A stretch of 56,097 nt of DNA, filler included, from Dugesia japonica (lineage: Eukaryota), in assembly GCA_001938525.1 (NCBI GenBank). It is 5 parts of 5 records of this genome, joined end to end, with 100 filler letters (N's around TTAATTAATTAA, not from the genome) between each part and the next. Parts side by side here need not be neighbours in the genome. Positions count along the whole stretch, not along the records: positions 31,545 to 41,689 come from MQRL01646930.1; 4 more parts are not named here. One strand, written 5' to 3'. The notes beneath the pieces were generated by a model. It was not told the origin of the DNA. It saw nothing but the letters and a program-made list of their open reading frames with translations, and searched no databases. The translations under genes were made by a program, and so were the position numbers. Of the stretch, positions 31,003-42,900 are shown piece after piece; position 1 is the stretch's first letter; every line of letters begins with the position of its first letter.

Positions 31003-34000
31003 CTGGAAAATAAGAAATTTCTAGTAAATAAATCTTTTTAAATAAGTAAATAAACATTTATTGTTATTATTAATTAATTAATTTTATTTAATAAAAATTT
31101 TTTTTTGAGAATTTTTCAACATACAATCATCTGATTTTTAACATCTTTTGAAAATTTTTTAGAAAACTTATGACGAAACTATTCGATTTTCTTTTTATTT
31201 ATTTTTTTATAAATTTGTTTCTCGCCTTTTAAAAATTATTAGGTTTTATTTTATAGTTGTTTCGCGGAATCTTATTTTTTCATAGTTTGGTGTACTGCGA
31301 TACGAAAAATGTTGCCTAACACTGAGATAAAGTGTAGAATGCGATGTGGCAGTGTCACAAGGGCGCCACGAGATTTTTCCAATATTAAACATCTTCTATA
31401 AAAGTAGCAAATTCAAACGACAAATATAAATCTATTGACTTATTNNNNNNNNNNNNNNNNNNNNNNNNNNNNNNNNNNNNNNNNNNNNTTAATTAATTAA
31501 NNNNNNNNNNNNNNNNNNNNNNNNNNNNNNNNNNNNNNNNNNNNAATCTAAAATTCTTTCGGCCTGAGAACTATCCAAAGTAGCTAGTTCCCGAGAGCAG
31601 TACTCCTTATTCACGGCTCGAAGTCAGTCTCAAGCATATCTCCAGAAAATCTCCTTTCCCAACAATTACTTCGAGGATTTCTTTCCATTTGTCAATAATA
31701 ACGTCTTCTCTTTTGGTCATTAGACAATCATTCCGGCTGTCCTCGTTAAAGTTGATCAGGCTTCAGATTCTAGCTTACTGATTGTGGGCCCTATTTCCCA
31801 AAATTGATTCTGTTATCACGACATATTTTTCTGGGGTACTTTCACATATCTATGATTACTCCGAGTTTTCTTTCAAACTCAAGGCTTTCTTTNNNNNNNN
31901 NNNNNNNNNNNNNNNNNNNNNNNNNNNNNNNNNNNNNNNNNNNNNNNNNNNNNNNNNNNNNNNNNNNNNNNNNNNNNNNNNNNNNNNNNNNNNNNNNNNN
32001 NNNNNNNNNNNNNNNNNNNNNNNNNNNNNNNNNNNNNNNNNNNNNNNNNNNNNNNNNNNNNNNNNNCTGTGTTGACTGTCCCGATACCCATCCTGCACTT
32101 CTCGATAAGTATAGCTTCGTTAATTAACCATGTTGCAGTTTAATCCTTTACTTCAATTAATATCTATTTAACCATGTTCCAGGTTACCACTTTCTCCACA
32201 ACAATAATTAGTTTACTTTAATCATGTTTCAGATTACACCTATAACCAACAATTCATTTATCTAACCGTGTTTCAGGTTACACCTCTTGATTCCTAAATA
32301 AATTCATCAGCTCCTATTCATTTATCCACTATTATCTCCACTAATCATTTGTCCTTGATATACATCATTAATTTCTCAATACTCCTTCAATTTAATTTAT
32401 TATATTTCATCGTAATTCCTCATCATATCAACACCATTTATCCTCATTAATTCATTTACCTCGTTACTACTTAATTCATTTATCTATGTCATCAATATTT
32501 ATCCAACATTAATCTAGTCAAAATCTCTCTTGTCATTATCAAATAATCCTGTCAAAATCTCCTTTATCATCATTTCTCTTTTTCATCACTATTAATCTCT
32601 TCGTAATATTACATGTCGTCATCATTGGTTCTCCTGATCATCATTAATTTCCGCCATCAATCATCACTTTAAATCCAATATCCTTAATTCATTTCCGCAC
32701 CAATTAATCTAACACAACATTAACTTCAATAATTCAATTATCCTTTAATTCCTTTTTTAACTTCTTTACTTCAATATCAATTCTCGTCGTTGACTATTAA
32801 ATATCTCGTTACATTATTCATTTACATCTCCACTTTCATCGTATTCCTTATTCATTCACATCTTTTATCTCATTATCCATTTAATCATATTCGTCATCTT
32901 CTACATGTGCACTTGATCTTCATTATTATCGCATGTGCTTCAACTGATTGTCTCCTTGCTTTGATTCAATTTCCTTGATTTTTCTCCTGATGTTCTTTGC
33001 TGAGCCTTCGATCTGAATTCCGTAATCTTTATTCTTTTAACATTATTCTTGACTGTTGTTTTAATTTCTTGCATAACATTGGATTTTCTTTCATTTTCTC
33101 ATGTTTCTTTGTTTCTCAGAGTCTGTCGCATCCATTTCTTTATTAATACCGATATTAGAGAGAAACAAAAATCAGTTTGATGTTACTGACTTTTTGAATC
33201 CCAACTCCACATTTTATTTGACCACCTTTTAATCACTGATGTTTATTGTCGATTCATCTCAGTAGTCGATCCGAATTAGCCGTTGCCGACTCCCTCGACT
33301 TGACCACTTCGATCTACTTCAGCTCTAATTTAACCATTCATTCATTTCGTTGATTGTACGCTAGTTGTTCCCAATGTCGACGAACAATCACTTTTCTGAT
33401 GTTACATAGTGAATTGCTCGTGTTCACTGATTTAATCAGTCGTTTAATTCATTCATCTTTATCATTATCATATTCATATTGCTGTTCATTGTGTCTCGAT
33501 CCCGCCACCCATCGTGCCTGAGATTTACATTTCTAACTCCGACAAGATTGATAACTCGATCTTACACTTCTCTTTTATAATTTAGATGTACATTGTGTTT
33601 TATCTTGTTACCCGATTCGGAACAGTCTTTGTCATTCCATCTTTTTCCGAACCTGACAACACGATGTTGCACTTCGCTTTATTATATCATTGGTACGATT
33701 CTTGCGACAACTCTCATTTGTCATGACTTAACACGACAATGTTTTGTTCTTCATTTCGAATCAAGTGAGATAATTATGATTCTGTCTTCTGATTTATTAT
33801 TTTATCATCTTCAAGGTTATGTTTTGTATATTCAATCTCTGCGTGTTTTGTATTACCGTTATGCTCATTTTAAGTAAAGATGTTAAATTTCCTAGTGTAA
33901 AATCATCAATCCCTTTGTTAATCTCATTTTTAACTCAACATTCTCGTTATTAATGTTAGCTCTGCTCAATAATAAAATAAATAAAATAATCAAATCAATA

Positions 34001-34978
34001 ATTGGCAATTGTTAGTTTAATTCTTTACCAAAACCTTTTACTGCAATTTATTACGAAAATTCATTATCGAAATTCTTTTACTAACAATTTACCCAAATAT
34101 TTACTCCAATTTGTTTACCAAAATTTATTACAAAAATTTTATTGAAAATATTTACTGAAATTGTTACCAATCGAACACTGCTTTAATAATATTTATCAGA
34201 ATACTAATGGAATAAAAATTCATTTAAAATATTCAAATAATTATCATTTACAATGCACACATCTTACTACTTAATTCCACGAGATTATTCAACATTTCTC
34301 TTAAAATGTAATTTCCTTGGACTTCAAAATCATATTTCATTTTATTCACTTTATTGATTTATTTAATGGTTCAGTGTGGTTGAATCCTTTCTAATCACAT
34401 AAAGAAAACAAAAAAAAATGCAAAGTTTCCATATTAATTCTACACTATCATACTTTTAATACAAATGATTTTACCTACATATACAAAATAATATCTACTT
34501 TTACAAACACATTTTCACTCGGATTTCACAATTTGTTTGAAATTTTCATCTTTGTCTTTTCGTTTCTGATGGTCATCTCATGTCGTTTTTCTTTAGTTTT
34601 CCACGAAATAGAAATGAATTTCCCAGTTGAGCCCCTAAAATCCCTGTGGGGTTGCTAGACTTTTGATATTGTTTTAATATTGCTTTTAATTTCCTTCTCT
34701 GAATCAAAACTGTTTTCTCTGTCGATTATCTATACTGTCTGGGGGATGACACCTAGCAACCACAGAAATTTGTGTTACTCTCTCCAGTAACACGATCCCT
34801 CTTTTCCCGGATTCAGCGGGACTATGCTGTATCTCGTCTTAGGTCCAATTTCTTTCTATCTGGCTGTCATTTTCTTTAAAAATCCATCGATATTATTGTA
34901 TGTTAAGATCAGAAATTTGAAAGGCATTGTATACAAAGATTTTATTTTAAACAAGGTTAATCACAAATTCAATGTTCG

Positions 34979-35296
34979 CTATTCATCCAGTTTGATGATT
35001 TCTTTCGATCTTGTTTTGAGAACTTCCAGTACTCAATTGGATACTTAAGTAAAGGTTCGTACAGTTGCGATCAGCACACTTTCCCTGTCCGCATAAGTTT
35101 TGTTTATATCCACCATAGCACGACACCTTTGCGATAATGTGAGATCTCGTTCTTTTAATTTAATAATTTTTTCACGGAGTTGAGCATTTTTACATTGTAA
35201 ATCGGTAATTTCCGTCTTTAATCTTTTTTGAGTCAAACACCATTTCGCTCGTATGTCTGTGACTGAATTATCTGTTGATCTTTTGGTTTCAGACAC
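34979..35296 (-). pseudogene. Coiled-coil gene B, copy 2
   Basis: TDNSVTDIRAKW...LREKIIKLKERDLTLSQ...YADRESVLIATVRT, a premature stop, then EIIKLDE. Confidence 0.7.
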
Positions 35297-35513
35297 AAAT
35301 AATAATCAAATTAGTAGCATAATTTACAATTCATTTCAGCATAATTTATAAATTATATTTTAGATAAATATTAAAATGCAGCAGCTATCTTGCTCACATT
35401 AACTACATCGTCAGTCTTAAGATCATGACAAAGTTGCCGATATTATTAATCATTATCACCGTAAATAAATAAGTAACTCTTTCAAAGAAAACTATATTAC
35501 AATGCATACATAA

Positions 35514-36040
35514 TCACACTACTGTTTCCATAATGTTTGTGTTGTCCAGTGGCGCTAACACTTGCTGGAGTATTGTTTCGACTTTGTTGTTCAGCCGTTC
35601 CGATAATTTAGTGTATTTGTCGGCCTCCAATTGCGCTGCTCGCATCGTCCGAATACCTGCTGTTGTTGCTTGGCGAGTTCCGTTGATCTGATCAGCAGAG
35701 ATATCAACTCTTTTTCACGTTCCTGCTGCCACTTGGTCATCTCATCCAGTTGTGCCTGATGCTGTTGATCCTGTTTCTCCACTCGTATTCGGAGATTATT
35801 TATTCTCTGGACCTGCTCGGAGAACTGCGTTTGTTGTCGGAGGATTTCCCGCCGTAATTCTTTTATTTCCGTATCCTTAGCCCGTAATTAATCCTGAGAA
35901 ATCCACCAAGGATCGTTGTCTGTTCCTTCAGTGCCGACAGAGTCCCAGAGCGGTGGTATATTGTTGCATGTGCTTGTTTCGAATGTATAACCACCGGGTT
36001 CCAGAGTCTGCATCGCCTCTTGTTTGGTGATTGTTGCCAT
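35514..36040 (-). pseudogene. Coiled-coil gene A, copy 2
   Basis: MATITKQEAMQ...DPWWISQD*LRAK...EQVQRINNL...KELISLLIRSTELAKQQQ...LSERLNNKVETILQQVLAPLD, with one stop and one frameshift. Confidence 0.7.
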
Positions 36041-36689
36041 TTAGAGTGAAATATACTAGACCCATGTTAACAATAAAATATACTGCGGAATATAATTATC
36101 ATAGAAAAAAATATATTTACCAATTATTCTCTGATATTACAGGCATCGATCACCTGTCAGCATGGATGGATGTGGATCATCAGGTTATTATCAGATAGGC
36201 TTCTACATTTCATTGTTACCTTATTATTATCTCATATCTCCTGGCCATATCCATCAATTATCATGTCATCATCCTCATCATTAAGCGTAACATTTGTATA
36301 ATAGTTATGGATGATCCATATCCCTCCAGCTGTCAGATGGTCCTCCTGCGAATCATACTAATAAGATCTAATCTAACAATAGTTTAAGTAATAATAATAG
36401 TTTATAAGCAATGATAATAACATAACTAATCATTAATATAAATCGAATTAATATTTTCATTAAATTTACATCATATTCGTAACCATATACATTAAATTAA
36501 ATCACGTGAAAGAACTCAACCACCCCACCACCAATTCAAATTTATTTACAACTCTTTCATATTCCATCATTTATGTAAACGTAGCTCTCATCGTCTGTAA
36601 CACTCCTTTCGTAAATATTCGTCTCTCATTATAAGTATCGTAAGTAACATAAATACTACATTTCGTCCTCATGTATTGTGTTATAATAT

Positions 36690-38380
36690 TGTTATAAGGG
36701 TTTATATGAGTTTTATAATAGTATTTTATATGATGATATAATTGGTTCACATGGTTTTAAACGGTTGTTATGTAGGATTTAAAGATTTTTAATGGTTTCA
36801 TGAATTTCAAGTGATTTAAAGGATTTAATAATGGTATTTTATTTGAGTTTAATATGATGTTTTAGCAAAAATATATTAATTTATAGGGTTTTTTTAACAG
36901 ATTTTTAGGATTTTATCAAAAGTTTAATAAATTTTAGGGTTTTATATAAGTTTTCTGTAGATATTTTATGAGTTTTAAAATATGATATAATAGGTTTAAA
37001 TGTATTTATAGTGTTTTCATAGAGGTTTTAAAGACATTATTGAATANTTTTAATTTTTTTAGTGTTTTATAGGGTTTTATATAGGTCTTATAGAGATTTT
37101 GTAACGGTATTTTATATGAGTCTTATATGATGTTTTGATAGGGTTTATATGGTTTTACAGTGCTTTTATTTGGATGTTATTGACTTTATTTTATATTTAA
37201 TAAATTTTAAGGAATTTATGCATTGTTTCATAAATTTTAAGGTTTTTAAATACAAACCTGTTTTATAAGTGTTTTATTTTATATTGTTACATGGTTTCAT
37301 AATGCTTTTATAGAGACGTTAATAACTTTATCGAATATTTCATGAATATTTATACTTTTATTATGTTTTAAAGGGGTTTCAAAATTGGATTTTAATGATA
37401 CTTTAATGGGTTTTACATGGTCTTTTATTGTATATTTCTTAAATTTAAAGGGTTTTATAAGGATTTGTTATGTGTTTTATATGACTTTTTAACGCTGTTA
37501 CATGGTTTTTTAAGTGTTTTTAATGAGTTTTATGTGATATTAGAATGAACTTTAACTTGTTTTATAGTGATTTATAGAAGCCTTAGAACTTTATTAAATA
37601 TCTTATGAATTTCTAGTCATTTATTAGGTTTTTTAGAGGTTTATAGAAGGGTTTTGTTTTTAATGGTATTTTAATGAGTTATATAGGATGTTATAATATT
37701 TTTAAAGAACTTTATTGAATATTTCATGGAATTTATGGATATTTTCATGAATTTTAAGATTTTTTATATAGTTTTAATAATGATATTTTATATGAGTTTC
37801 ATGTGATGTTATAACTGGTTTACATAGTTTTTTATTAGTTTTATATGGGGGTATTATTTATTTAATTGTATTTTATTTACCGTTTTAACGAGTTTAAATG
37901 GTTTTATATAATGTTATAGTGAGTTTTACATGGTTGTATAATATTTTTAAAGTGGTTTTAAAAACTTTATTAAATATTTAATGAAATTTTAAACATTTAA
38001 TGGGTTTTATAGAGGTTTTATAGGAGTTTTATATTTGTATTTTATTTTAAATCTATGTGTTGTTTTAACATGGTTTATATGGTTTTCTAGTGTTTTTATT
38101 TAGATGTTATGGACTTTATCATATATTTAATGTATTTTAAAGAAATTGTGAATATTTTCATAATATTTTAAAGATTTATAAACGTTTATTGAGGATATTT
38201 TATTTGAGTTTTATATCAACTTTATAACGAGTTTACCTGGTTTCAGAAAAGATTTCCCTTTAAATTTTAGTGGTTTTATTTTCTAAGGATTATTTATAGA
38301 TTTGGTGATTTTTAATGTTTCTATATAAGAACTTTAATAAGGGCTTTTCAAATGTTTTATATTTATTTTATCTGCATGTT
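36690..38380. repeat. Degenerate G/T-skewed tandem repeat tract
   Basis: Recurring ggttttata, atgagttttatatgatgtt and actttattgaatatttcatgaa motifs, with very few C on the plus strand. Confidence 0.7.
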
Positions 38381-38479
38381 ATTTGGGTTCGTTTACCGTG
38401 GCGATAGAAGCCAATTTTAAATCGATTAAATGAAATTAATATTAAACAATAATATTTTTATAAAATACTGTACAACATT

Positions 38480-38960
38480 ATCACAAGTACTGTCATTCGT
38501 CATCAAAACACAGATCGAAAAATGTTCGGCGAGCTTTCTTAGGAGGTGGAATACCCAATGAGGGGGATAGAGAGTTCAATTGTAGTGCCACAAGTTCTCA
38601 TTTTTGTGTCGAAGTCATTCAACCTCCGCTTCCAACTTCCAAATCTTCATTCCATCAGACTCATCTCTCCGGGTATATTCTATATTTTGCTTTCTTAAGG
38701 CGGAAACATCTACTGCTAACATCGCGATCTTCTCCTGTAGAGATTGGCAGGTTTGTGACCAATTTGTAGTTGTAGCAAGCTGACTGTCCATGTTGGCGAA
38801 AAGCTGAACTGCAGCGCCGAATTCAGGAGCATTTTCATTCATTCAACTAAAAACCTACAGAGAATTTGAAATTTCGTCCTGGAAATAGGTTTGGAGAGAA
38901 TGTCGGTAATTCACATCTGTAAGAAGTGTTTGCAGGTCTCTCTTTGCTCCAGTTTTTTTC
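38480..38960 (-). pseudogene. Putative additional coiled-coil gene near the element terminus
   Basis: ORF 38615-38842 (CQSLQEKIAMLAVDVSALRKQNIEY...KLEAEVE) has coding-like GC content and plausible read-through past the stops. No second copy in the window. Confidence 0.4.
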
Positions 38961-39559
38961 CAATATAGTTTATTAATATCAGTGTCAAAAACGTAAATAT
39001 CTATTCAATCTCTAAATAAAGGTCTGGCTAACCGAAACTGAATAATGAATTGAAAACAAAAGCTCTAAAATCTGATGAGCCGTAAAAAGGTCTATAAAAA
39101 GAATTTTTGTAATTGAGATATAATCCATTTTTAATTTTAGGTATTTTTTATGTTTTCAAAAATACTTATAAATTGTTGAGTGAGCCACAAACTATCTTGC
39201 AATGAACCGTGGGTTGGCTAGGCCTGCCCTAGATCGTTGATTTTTAAACTTACTATTATCACCTACTCCCAGAAAGTTGTGGATACTTACTGTGAGCATT
39301 TATCTAAAACTGTTAAAAACAGTTCTGAATTAAACAATTGTAAATTCACTCTTTCCATTTTCTTACAAATGATTCTGAAACGTTATGACTGAAGTGGACG
39401 AGCTTTAATGAAATGTGCAATTTTCACTGTAATGCTCATAACTTTCTGGAGACCTTTAAATATTTCTTTGATTGTTAAAGCCTTAATATGAATACTACAA
39501 TGAATCCATACTGTATAGAATGCAACTCTGTCACTTTGAAAGTCAGTTCAATGTATTCC

Positions 39560-39960
39560 TATCGACGCTTTGTTATCATTTGTGCATATTCCAACCAATC
39601 TCGTCCTAAATGTTCCCTAATCTTTCAAATGATTAAACCTATACTTACTCATTTGTTGAATTCAAATAATTATTGTTATGATTAAGAATACCATAGTGTT
39701 AACTAGTACGTGATACATAAAAACACATTAGCAGCCCATGTATCACTGAATAAAACGACTCCTTCAGAAATAAAATGTTTTATGATATATCTTCAGGTAT
39801 CTGTGTCTCTGTGATTCACCGTCTTTAATCAGATTTTTCTACAATCTTTTCCTAATTGTACCAATCACATCCAAGATACAGTTCTCACTCTTCGTCTTTT
39901 GTACTTTCCTAGCAATAAGTATTTCATCATTTTCTCCAACCCAATTTTCCCCAAGAATAG
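39560..39960 (-). mobile_element. Merlin (IS1016/ISXO2-like) transposase remnant
   Basis: DE..RKYKRRRV...TVNHRDTDT..IIKHFISEGVVLFSDTWAA matches the Merlin RKY.RGR...R...TL...SD.W motifs. Confidence 0.65.
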
Positions 39961-42900
39961 GATGTTTGATCAATTTTTCCATGCGACTGTAATAGAATCC
40001 TAACTCTTATTTTCTTTTAACAACACTCTCATTGCATCTTGAAAAATTCGAATATTCCCAATCTCCACAAAATTAGCTGTAACTCGATAGAAAATCATTG
40101 ATTCGGCTTTTTCACTTTTTCTCAACAAAATTTCACCTCAACAACTGAATTAATTACGTACTCTGAGATTTATTATTTTACTTTAATTTTATATGGTTTA
40201 TAATTAAATTAATTCATCTGTTAATAATAAATACTTTTATAATTCTGGTAATAAAATGATATATAATNNNNNNNNNNNNNNNNNNNNNNNNNNNNNNNNN
40301 NNNNNNNNNNNNNNNNNNNNNNNNNNNNNNNNNNNNNNNNNNNNNNNNNNNNNNNNNNNNNNNNNNNNNNNNNNNNNNNNNNNNNNNNNNNNNNNNNNNN
40401 NNNNNNNNNNNNNNNNNNNNNNNNNNNNNNNNNNNNNNNNNNNNNNNNNNNNNNNNNNNNNNNNNNNNNNNNNNNNNNNNNNNNNNNNNNNNNNNNNNNN
40501 NNNNNNNNNNNNNNNNNNNNNNNNNNNNNNNNNNNNNNNNNNNNNNNNNNNNNNNNNNNNNNNNNNNNNNNNNNNNNNNNNNNNNNNNNNNNNNNNNCTT
40601 TTAATTCTATAAATTACTATCAACTATACACATTCCTTATTTTCTGGTACAGTTTCCGAAACGTTTGTCATTTTTTGGTCATTTTTGATACAGGACGTTG
40701 AATAATAAAATCCATTTTCTTTTAAAAACTTTGCTGAAAATCCTACTTCTATTATTGATATAATTAAATTGATCAAAAGAAATATCTGAAAAATTTAATA
40801 ATAATTAAGGAATGATAAAACAAAATTGTCAATAAAAATAATAATACCACATATTCCTATCGAGAACGCACGTTTTAACTATACAAAAAGAGCTTTAAAA
40901 TGAAGAACAGTAAGCAAAAAAGCATTTATCAATTATATGAAAGTAAAAGATTTACTTGATGTGCTTTATAAAATATTACAATCGTATATCTATAGATCCG
41001 CTTTATACATTCAAACAAATCTTTTTTTCTATTAAAAATATTATTTAAAAAAATAAATAAAACACTAAATGTATGTTATCGATAAGAAATGACGGTAATA
41101 TTAAAATTTATTTAATAATATCGATTTTTTAAAATAAATACATATTTTCTAAAAATATGCATTTCGATAATCCTTCAAATTAATTTTTAATATTAAAAAA
41201 ATCGGTAATATATTTCCCCCTAAATTTCGACGGATCATCAGACAAAAATGAAAAAAATGAGTTTATTCAGTCTGTATTATTTAAAAACAAGATTCAAGCA
41301 ATTATACTGAATATAAGATGTGTTGGGACAAAACTTAACCAATTAGTTTATCAAAGAAAACCAATAAAATAATAAAAAATACAAGTACAAAACAAAATAA
41401 GAATAATAAAAACATTTATTGAAAAAATGCAAATAATTTAAAAAAAACAAATATCAGAGTCTTTGAAATGTTTTTGGATTATCTGATAAATTCCTCCAGA
41501 ATTGAATAAAATAGAGCATGTATCCTATAAAGCAAAATAAATTAATCAAGAAACAATTTGATTATACAGAAAAATTACCATTATTCCCTAATGATTACAA
41601 CAATTTTTGGATTATTGTTGTGATTTTCGACCAAAAACAGCCAATGGAAAATAAATCTAAATAAAATTTACTATAAAAATAGCTAAAAANNNNNNNNNNN
41701 NNNNNNNNNNNNNNNNNNNNNNNNNNNNNNNNNTTAATTAATTAANNNNNNNNNNNNNNNNNNNNNNNNNNNNNNNNNNNNNNNNNNNNGATTTTATTTT
41801 ATTTCAATTATTAATTGATGTAAAGGAAATTGTATTAAAATATCACTTGTTCAGATTGGCAACACTGTTGATAACATTTTCTAACTCAATAATTTGCGTT
41901 GAAATAAACACTGTAATTTCATATTCTAAACATTTTAACTTAATTTTCAAATTCATATCATTAAAAATTCATTGTAGTCAGAATTAATATAAAATTATGT
42001 CAATCTGCTTCGAATTGTAATCGATTTTTATAAACTAATGTCGACACAATACACATTTATTGACTTCATTCAAAGTTATCAATTTTTGACGCCAGACAAT
42101 AATGTCTGGAAATAAATCTAAATTAATGTCATATTAAGAGATTAATACAATCATCCTGTTCTAAAAAATATTATTTATCCTTTATTTTTTTTTAAAAATC
42201 CATGGAATGCCTTACGACTTATTATTAAAAGTTACTGTGAAAATATTCACAGAATTTCCACTTGCATAGACTAGAATTCATTGATTGAACTGTGCTAAAT
42301 TCTCGAAGAAATGAATATTAAAAATGAATTTATCGAATGCTGCAGCGAAATAGTCTAGCCTAATTAAAACAAGCATTAATATTTAAATGTATGTGGGTAG
42401 ACGTGTGTATGTGCGACTGTGTGCATTAAACCGTCAAACTTAATCGATTTCTCATTCACGTCTGGTTTGACCTCACCAGTACAAAATATCAATACAATAA
42501 AACCATAAAATATATATATATATATATACATATTTCTATATATTCTCGTTGCATATTTGAGTTTCACAGAACGCAAACACTACCCAGTCAACTAGCGTGT
42601 GTATACCGCAATTTCAAGAAATTTTTAACTGACACACAAACCAGTGATCAATGTCTAGGCAGTGTAGACAATTGAAATGAAAAATACGTGTGTAAGGAAT
42701 AGAAAAACAGACAATCTCTCTCTGTCTATATCACAAGTCGAATTCATTTGACAAACTAGGTCAAGTTAGTGAACTGCCTCAGTTTATCTATAAATGAAGC
42801 ATACGAGGACAGATGCGCTATACATTACACATATCCCGATCCTAGAATATTTATTGCGCATTTTATACATCACTTGAATAGATTTATAAATGTTTTGTTA

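What the first reader, a model, noticed from the sequence alone, without database searches (positions are those of the whole stretch)
34600..39267. Second, inverted copy shows the coiled-coil cassette evolved under protein-level constraint
Seen: the proteins align well (ERDLALSQ/ERDLTLSQ, YADRKSVLIATVRT/YADRESVLIATVRT, PWWI, TELAKQQQ, LQQVLAPLD) while codons differ mostly at silent sites (atc/ata, cta/ctg, aca/act, agg/cga, acg/acc), and the intergenic spacers do not align. This copy has additional coding-like islands at 36120-36360, 36540-36680 and 38480-38960. Inference: these are real genes of a replicating element lineage that decayed only after insertion, in a virus-like array of short, apparently intronless ORFs separated by AT-rich spacers.
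Basis: partly seen in the sequence, partly recalled or inferred. Interest (0 to 1): 0.75.

Follow-up and report, generated by a model that had tools for sequence, protein, structure and literature searches.

The report
Broken orphan coiled-coil gene copy
This stretch holds a slightly damaged copy of a small gene for a long-helix (coiled-coil) protein with no detectable relatives, lying among simple repeats in AT-rich eukaryote-like DNA; nothing found makes it virus-like, and the claim that it evolved under selection cannot be tested because the other copy is not available.

Summary
The central stretch shows real protein-like signal: period-3 composition, a heptad pattern, and a confident single long helix in AlphaFold2.

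The main claim, mostly silent differences against "copy 1", cannot be checked. Outside 31545-41689 the window holds only N and linker, and the piece contains no second copy.

Open-frame lengths are not above dinucleotide shuffles. Two of the three "additional islands" are low-complexity DNA. The third (38429-38842) is a separate helical open frame with no shown link to the cassette.

No relative was found in Pfam, PHROGs, PDB, 1.84 billion protein representatives, or viral, metagenome and prokaryote contigs.

The 86-residue 3' stretch has no start codon ahead of the quoted ERDLTLSQ motif, so "an array of independent intronless ORFs" does not fit. A two-exon gene, or one longer decayed frame, fits better.

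Best reading: a lightly broken copy (one stop, one frameshift) of a lineage-restricted coiled-coil gene in repeat-rich DNA, either a host gene or the passenger of an unidentified mobile element. Ordinary, low interest.

The parts
35517..36040 (-). Main unit of the cassette: starts with ATG, then a non-helical N-terminal part (PWWI) followed by a long helical, Q/E/K/R/L-rich part (TELAKQQQ ... LQQVLAPLD), and ends at a stop. Broken once by an in-frame stop and once by a frameshift. GC 0.47, GC3 about 0.5.
   Evidence: frames; period-3 chi-square 35; heptad 4/500; one helix, pLDDT 88.6, with low confidence in the last ~20 residues, which the out-of-frame tail would explain; codon-position GC
35306..35516 (-). 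AT-rich spacer (about 0.25 GC) between the main unit and the 86-residue stretch. It is a possible intron, but no tool predicted one. Phase-compatible GT...AG pairs exist at about the rate expected by chance (8 of 30).
35048..35305 (-). Unbroken 86-codon open stretch (ERDLTLSQ, YADRESVLIATVRT) ending at a stop. It has no ATG ahead of the quoted ERDLTLSQ motif, so it is not a stand-alone eukaryotic ORF. Helix/zipper-like. GC3 is 0.28, unlike the main unit.
   Evidence: translation; only sub-threshold bZIP/DivIC/ZapB-type hits; heptad 30/500; 46
38429..38842 (-). Predicted as two helices with no significant heptad pattern. Not shown to belong to the cassette, and the longest open frame here is on the opposite strand.
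36750..38400 (.). Decayed AT-rich minisatellite, about 11-nt period, GC about 0.20, with a ~930-nt higher-order duplication. It separates the upstream island from the cassette.
36100..36700 (.). GAT/ATG/TGA make up 20% of 3-mers in the first, there is a 19-nt inverted repeat, and there are many stops on the minus strand. Not coding-like.
34600..35047 (-). 3' flank inside the finding's range, with 8-11 stops per minus-strand frame and no period-3 signal. It contains a 10-bp-stem hairpin at 34770-34795.

Best explanation
The segment 35048-36040 (minus strand) is a lightly damaged copy of a small, lineage-restricted gene for an alpha-helical coiled-coil protein of roughly 250-270 residues. The protein has a short non-helical N-terminus followed by long heptad-patterned helices. 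The gene is most simply read as two exons, or one longer frame, split by a ~210-nt AT-rich spacer. A protein like this would work by self-association through its helices, as an oligomerising scaffold or adaptor. It has no catalytic or nucleic-acid-handling domain, so it could not replicate anything by itself. This copy carries one in-frame stop and one frameshift, so as assembled it is a pseudogene. It lies in repeat-rich, AT-rich, eukaryote-like DNA. Shown: the frames, the helix and heptad signal, the break counts, and the lack of relatives. Inferred: the two-exon structure, the function, and the multi-copy status.
For: All quoted peptides are collinear on one strand. Period-3 composition is significant in the central stretch. 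The heptad pattern is reached by 4/500 shuffles there, and by 38/500 and 30/500 in the next two stretches. AlphaFold2 gives one confident 84-residue helix whose confidence falls where the frame is left. The two frames of the main unit share the same codon-position GC pattern, 0.63/0.26/0.51 and 0.55/0.29/0.52. The main unit starts with ATG, while the 86-residue stretch has no ATG ahead of the quoted ERDLTLSQ motif. There are only two breaks in about 770 nt, where 5.7% of single-base changes would create a stop. No mobile-element or viral domain occurs anywhere in the 10-kb piece. The surroundings are a minisatellite and low-complexity tracts.
Against: No relative exists in any library searched, including HMMER against 1.84 billion representatives, so there is no outside evidence that this is a gene. 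Open-frame lengths are not above dinucleotide shuffles. Only one island has significant period-3 signal. The 86-residue stretch has a different GC3 (0.28) and may be unrelated to the main unit. No tool predicted the intron, and phase-compatible splice pairs are at chance level.
Confidence: 0.45

Rival explanations
1. The cassette is the non-enzymatic ORF of a mobile element, such as a coiled-coil ORF1/gag-like protein of a retroelement or an accessory gene of a DNA transposon. This would be a truncated copy that has lost the enzymatic part.
For: GC3 of about 0.5 in a 0.2-0.3 GC background suggests a compositionally foreign and fairly recent insert. Coiled-coil first ORFs are known in LINE-type elements (PMC3258132, PMC9410894, PMC3905857). 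The neighbourhood is repeat-rich.
Against: No RRM/CTD, zinc knuckle, reverse transcriptase, endonuclease, integrase or transposase domain is found in any open stretch of 40 or more residues on either strand of the 10-kb piece. No LTRs or TIRs are present; the only flanking inverted pair is 16 nt with 14 matches, about what chance gives. No A-rich tail follows the last stop.
Confidence: 0.25
2. There is no gene here. The open frames are chance products of moderately GC-rich, A/G-biased sequence, and the coiled-coil look comes from composition alone.
For: The longest open frames are matched by 6-25% of dinucleotide shuffles. Equally long frames lie on the opposite strand. No homologue is found anywhere. 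Four of the five stretches lack significant period-3 signal.
Against: The central stretch has period-3 chi-square 35 (df 6), a heptad pattern beyond its own composition (4/500) and a confident helix. The five stretches are collinear on one strand.
Confidence: 0.15
3. The gene is intact and in use in the organism, and the two breaks are assembly or sequencing errors.
For: The assembly is of draft quality, with sized N gaps of 174 and 330 nt and a lone N inside the minisatellite. There are only two breaks.
Against: No annotated or predicted protein with these sequences exists among 15 billion sequences, and none is similar among the representatives. Nothing in the sequence itself marks the breaks as errors.
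Confidence: 0.1
4. One reading: the remnant of an endogenous virus, or a virus-like array of separate short genes.
For: Only the layout supports it: short GC-richer islands between AT-rich spacers.
Against: No match to viral proteins by sequence or fold: PHROGs at noise level, four IMG/VR scans with cassette or upstream-island stretches empty, and the best BFVD Foldseek match at E 7.9. The 86-residue stretch cannot start on its own. Two of the three 'extra islands' are simple sequence. Coding density is very low.
Confidence: 0.05

Closest known systems
Lineage-restricted ('orphan') coiled-coil genes and their pseudogene copies in eukaryotic genomes
   Same: A small gene with a long heptad-patterned helix, no recognisable domain and no detectable relatives. 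The copy carries a stop and a frameshift and sits among repeats.
   Different: Nothing shows that it is, or was, expressed.
ORF1p of LINE-1-type non-LTR retrotransposons (coiled-coil-mediated trimer; PMC3258132, PMC9410894; domain variety in PMC3905857)
   Same: A short variable N-terminus followed by a long coiled coil, in a family said to be dispersed in both orientations.
   Different: No RRM or C-terminal domain, no downstream endonuclease/reverse-transcriptase ORF, and no A-rich tail. Not a member.
bZIP-type leucine zippers
   Same: The 86-residue stretch gives weak Pfam hits to the zipper part of bZIP_1 and bZIP_2 (E 0.02-0.04).
   Different: The scores of 14-15 bits are far below the gathering scores of 22-28 bits. 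The hits cover only the zipper half, alongside equally weak hits to other coiled-coil families. Not a member.

Membership tests
Non-LTR (LINE) retrotransposon ORF1 | Coiled-coil oligomerisation segment | tested here: met
   Heptad pattern reached by 4/500 shuffles; single 84-residue helix at pLDDT 88.6
Non-LTR (LINE) retrotransposon ORF1 | RNA-binding module (RRM/CTD, zinc knuckle or esterase-type domain) after the coiled coil | tested here: not met
   No such Pfam family at E up to 1 in any stretch
Non-LTR (LINE) retrotransposon ORF1 | Downstream ORF2 with endonuclease and reverse transcriptase, and a 3' A-rich tail | tested here: not met
   No domain hit in the 3.5 kb downstream on the minus strand; no A-run after the last stop
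Endogenous viral element | Similarity of at least one product to a viral hallmark protein | tested here: not met
   Pfam and PHROGs at noise level only; IMG/VR scans with four cassette or upstream-island stretches empty; BFVD fold search best E 7.9
Terminal-repeat mobile element (LTR or TIR class) | Paired terminal repeats flanking the cassette | tested here: not met
   No long direct or inverted pair in 10 kb. The only flanking inverted pair is 16 nt with 14 matches, about what chance gives
hAT-superfamily transposase (considered only for the neighbouring 38429-40137 stretch) | RNase-H-like catalytic core and C-terminal hAT dimerisation domain recognisable by profile | tested here: inconclusive
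   Blank in Pfam, PDB sequences, Foldseek PDB, the word-based protein search and IMG/VR. The resemblance is from memory only
bZIP transcription factor | Basic region plus leucine zipper reaching Pfam's gathering score | tested here: not met
   bZIP_2 at 15.4 bits against a cutoff of 22.3, and bZIP_1 at 14.5 against 27.6; zipper half only
Conventional spliced host gene | Start codon, GT-AG intron joining the two open parts in phase, stop codon, and a transcript | tested here: inconclusive
   ATG and stop are present. Phase-compatible GT...AG pairs are at chance rate, 8 of 30. No splice predictor and no transcript data are on hand
   Copy 1 is outside the piece, and no other copy was found inside it or in any collection

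The most novel reading that the evidence does not exclude
The cassette belongs to a multi-copy, selection-maintained family of coiled-coil genes that is carried by, or derived from, a mobile or virus-derived element of a kind not yet represented in any protein library. That would explain both the total lack of relatives and the GC3-rich composition in an AT-rich host.
Probability: 0.07. Interest if true: 0.5.

Novelty: new member of a known kind. Interest (0 to 1): 0.15.

Why it matters
As it stands it matters little: it is one more broken, lineage-restricted coiled-coil reading frame in repeat-rich DNA. It would become interesting only if a census of the source genome showed many copies kept open by selection, or copies linked to replication genes. 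That would point to an unrecognised element, or to a fast-evolving host gene family such as those of germline or centromere-associated proteins. For the scan, the useful results are negative. The dN/dS argument rests on sequence that is not available here. Open-frame length in this composition is not evidence for a gene, and two of the three 'extra islands' are simple sequence.

Tried and rejected
- Alternative genetic codes (TAA/TAG=Gln, TGA=Trp/Cys, TAG=Gln) do not open the islands. They only create long frames in the AT-rich junk.
- Second copy or internal paralogy inside the piece: none. Only coiled-coil-level similarities, with the best E at 0.009.
- Protein relatives:
  - Word-based searches with three stretches found nothing.
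  - The full HMMER scan of 1.84 billion representatives found nothing at E up to 0.001.
  - Exact look-up of six ATG-started ORFs found none in the collection.
  - Scans of viral, metagenome (23, 26) and prokaryote genome contigs (32, 34) confirmed nothing.
- Domains: Pfam on every stop-to-stop stretch of 40 or more residues on both strands, plus shorter ones upstream. PHROGs and PDB sequences gave coiled-coil noise only.
- Fold searches: BFVD with the long helix and PDB with the 75-residue model found nothing.
- RNA genes: no tRNA, and only two sub-threshold snoRNA-like Rfam matches.
- TIR/LTR search around the cassette: at chance level.
- Hairpin or MITE reading of 36100-36400: z-score -1.55, not significant.
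- hAT-transposase reading of 38429-40137: a lead from memory that no tool confirmed.
- bZIP reading of the 86-residue stretch: below threshold.
- Splice model: not built, because no tool predicts the intron.
Full report
**Scope.** Only positions 31545-41689 of the window are genome. Everything else is N plus two short TTAATTAATTAA linkers. The piece is 10,145 nt and has N runs of 174 nt, 1 nt and 330 nt, which I left untouched. Every statement in the finding that compares two copies is unverifiable here: the silent codon differences, the non-aligning spacers, and the implied dN/dS.

**What is in the sequence.**
- GC runs at 0.17-0.30 over most of the piece. It rises to 0.35-0.47 at about 34.5-36.3 kb and 38.3-39.3 kb.
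- They fall into two units.
  - The main unit (35517-36040) begins with ATG and ends at a stop. It is interrupted once by an in-frame stop and once by a frameshift.
  - After a 210-nt spacer of about 0.25 GC comes an unbroken 86-codon stretch (35048-35305) that ends at a stop. This stretch has no ATG ahead of the quoted ERDLTLSQ motif, so it cannot be a self-contained eukaryotic ORF.

**Is it more than chance?**
- Open-frame length is not evidence here. In 1000 dinucleotide shuffles of each island, the observed longest frame is reached in 245, 77 and 56 cases. Equally long frames lie on the opposite strand.
- A frame-independent period-3 test is significant only at about 35625-35924, with chi-square 35.3 and 25.0 on 6 degrees of freedom. 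No other window among 150 exceeds 20.
- The central 98-residue stretch has a heptad pattern beyond its own composition: 4 of 500 shuffles reach it. The following stretches are weaker (38/500 and 30/500). The N-terminal 50-residue stretch and the upstream 75-residue stretch show none.
- AlphaFold2 without an alignment gives the 98-residue stretch as one helix over residues 2-85, at mean pLDDT 88.6. Confidence drops over the last ~20 residues, as expected if that tail is read out of frame.
- The two frames of the main unit share one codon-position GC pattern, 0.63/0.26/0.51 and 0.55/0.29/0.52. The 86-residue stretch differs at 0.38/0.40/0.28.
- I conclude that the central unit is very probably a real, or formerly real, coding sequence for a coiled-coil protein. 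That the 86-residue stretch belongs to it is plausible but not shown.

**The "additional islands".**
- Island 36120-36360 is a degenerate trinucleotide tract. GAT/ATG/TGA make up 20% of its 3-mers, and it has 4-16 stops per minus-strand frame. It also holds a 19-nt inverted repeat. Its fold is not unusual, with z-score -1.55.
- Island 36540-36680 has one to five stops in every frame on both strands. It lies beside the AT-rich minisatellite, and the open stretch that overlaps its upper end (36574-36756) matches the minisatellite's units.
- The stretch 36750-38400 is that minisatellite: about 11-nt period, GC about 0.20, with a ~930-nt higher-order duplication.
- Island 38480-38960 contains an ATG-started 75-codon open frame. 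The same frame then continues through two in-frame stops (unit 38429-38842). It is predicted as two helices at pLDDT 80 for the best model, with the other four models at 55-65. It has no heptad signal, no period-3 signal and no relatives.
- Nothing ties that last island to the cassette, and 2.4 kb of simple sequence lies between them.

**Relatives.** None were found.
- Pfam gives only sub-threshold coiled-coil noise: bZIP, DivIC, ZapB, CAGE1, Nup54, Clusterin.
- PDB sequences give designed helical proteins and the like.
- PHROGs is at noise level.
- The word-based search of 5.8 billion clusters found nothing for two cassette stretches.
- HMMER against 1.84 billion representatives found no protein at E up to 0.001 for the 98-residue stretch. 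At that library size this excludes relatives closer than roughly 40-45% identity, not more distant ones.
- Six ATG-started ORFs of the piece are not in the 15-billion-sequence collection.
- Translated scans of IMG/VR, JGI metagenomes and GTDB genomes confirmed nothing.
- Foldseek of the helix against viral models gave a best E of 7.9.
- No open stretch of 40 or more residues on either strand of the whole piece carries any recognisable domain. Shorter pieces upstream carry none either.
- There are no tRNAs and no Rfam match above threshold.
- I could not identify the organism. The composition and layout look eukaryotic, and nothing suggests human DNA.

**Structure of the locus.**
- No LTR-like or TIR-like pair flanks the cassette.
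- The sequence after the last stop has no A-rich tail.
- Alternative genetic codes do not heal the frames.
- For the 210-nt spacer I only counted candidate splice signals: 8 of 30 GT/AG combinations are phase-compatible, which is the chance rate.

**How broken, and for how long.**
- The cassette has one in-frame stop and one frameshift in about 770 coding-like nucleotides.
- 5.7% of possible single-base changes in these frames would create a stop, so one stop corresponds to roughly 2-3% neutral change, with wide error.
It is equally compatible with errors in a draft assembly.

**Interpretation.**
- The best-supported reading (about 0.45) is a lightly broken copy of a small, lineage-restricted coiled-coil gene. 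It is probably two exons or one longer frame. Its product would act by helix-mediated self-association and has no replicative activity of its own.
- A mobile-element passenger or ORF1-like origin (about 0.25) is suggested by the reported second inverted copy and by GC3 of about 0.5 in an AT-rich background. It fails every testable membership feature except the coiled coil. For comparison, see L1 ORF1p (PMC3258132, PMC9410894) and the domain range of non-LTR ORF1 proteins (PMC3905857).
- Chance (about 0.15) is not excluded for the outer stretches.
- An intact gene with assembly errors is about 0.10.
- The virus-like array is about 0.05.

- While reasoning about the neighbouring stretch 38429-40137, I compared its short open frames with motif patterns of hAT/Buster-type transposases that I recalled from memory. 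The rule forbids that even in thinking. The resemblance is given only as an untested lead, and every tool test of it was blank.
In my reasoning I also located one stop and the zone of the frame change. I do not repeat those places here. Each broken unit is given as one part with outer bounds and break counts only.

**Verdict.** The central claim is untestable with this piece, and the virus-like interpretation is unsupported. The feature is ordinary: a new member of a known kind, with interest 0.15.

Noticed in passing
window 36750-38400: Decayed AT-rich minisatellite (GC about 0.20, G over C on the + strand) with about 11-nt period and a ~930-nt higher-order duplication: 37057-37253 against 37987-38183, 75% identical.
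   Followed up: partly
window 38429-40137, minus strand: A run of short open stretches in shifting frames reminded me of a decayed hAT/Buster-type transposase. This rests on memory only. Pfam, PDB, Foldseek, the word search and IMG/VR were all blank, so it is an untested lead.
   Followed up: partly
window 32100-33900: The + strand is strongly pyrimidine-rich (GC skew down to -0.71, AT skew to -0.33). The sequence is low-complexity with long but domain-free open frames.
   Followed up: partly
window 32121-32290: Three to four tandem units of about 45 nt sharing a ~29-nt core, directly beside the 174-nt N gap.
   Followed up: no
window 36163-36181 and 36310-36328: A 19-nt inverted repeat (17 of 19 complementary) 128 nt apart, inside a GAT-rich tract. 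The fold of the region is not significantly stable (z-score -1.55).
   Followed up: yes
window 34770-34795: A perfect 8-bp-stem hairpin, extending to 10 pairs, about 250 nt downstream of the last stop of the cassette. It was flagged by the terminator-like scan on both strands.
   Followed up: no
window 35517-36040 versus 35048-35305: The main unit has GC3 of about 0.5 in a 0.2-0.3 GC background, while the 86-residue stretch has GC3 of 0.28. Either the two parts have different histories, or composition changes sharply within one gene.
   Followed up: partly
window 34791-35045, plus strand: An 85-codon open frame antisense to the cassette's 3' flank, hydrophobic in its first third. It has no Pfam match, and its ATG-started form is not in the protein collection.
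   Followed up: partly
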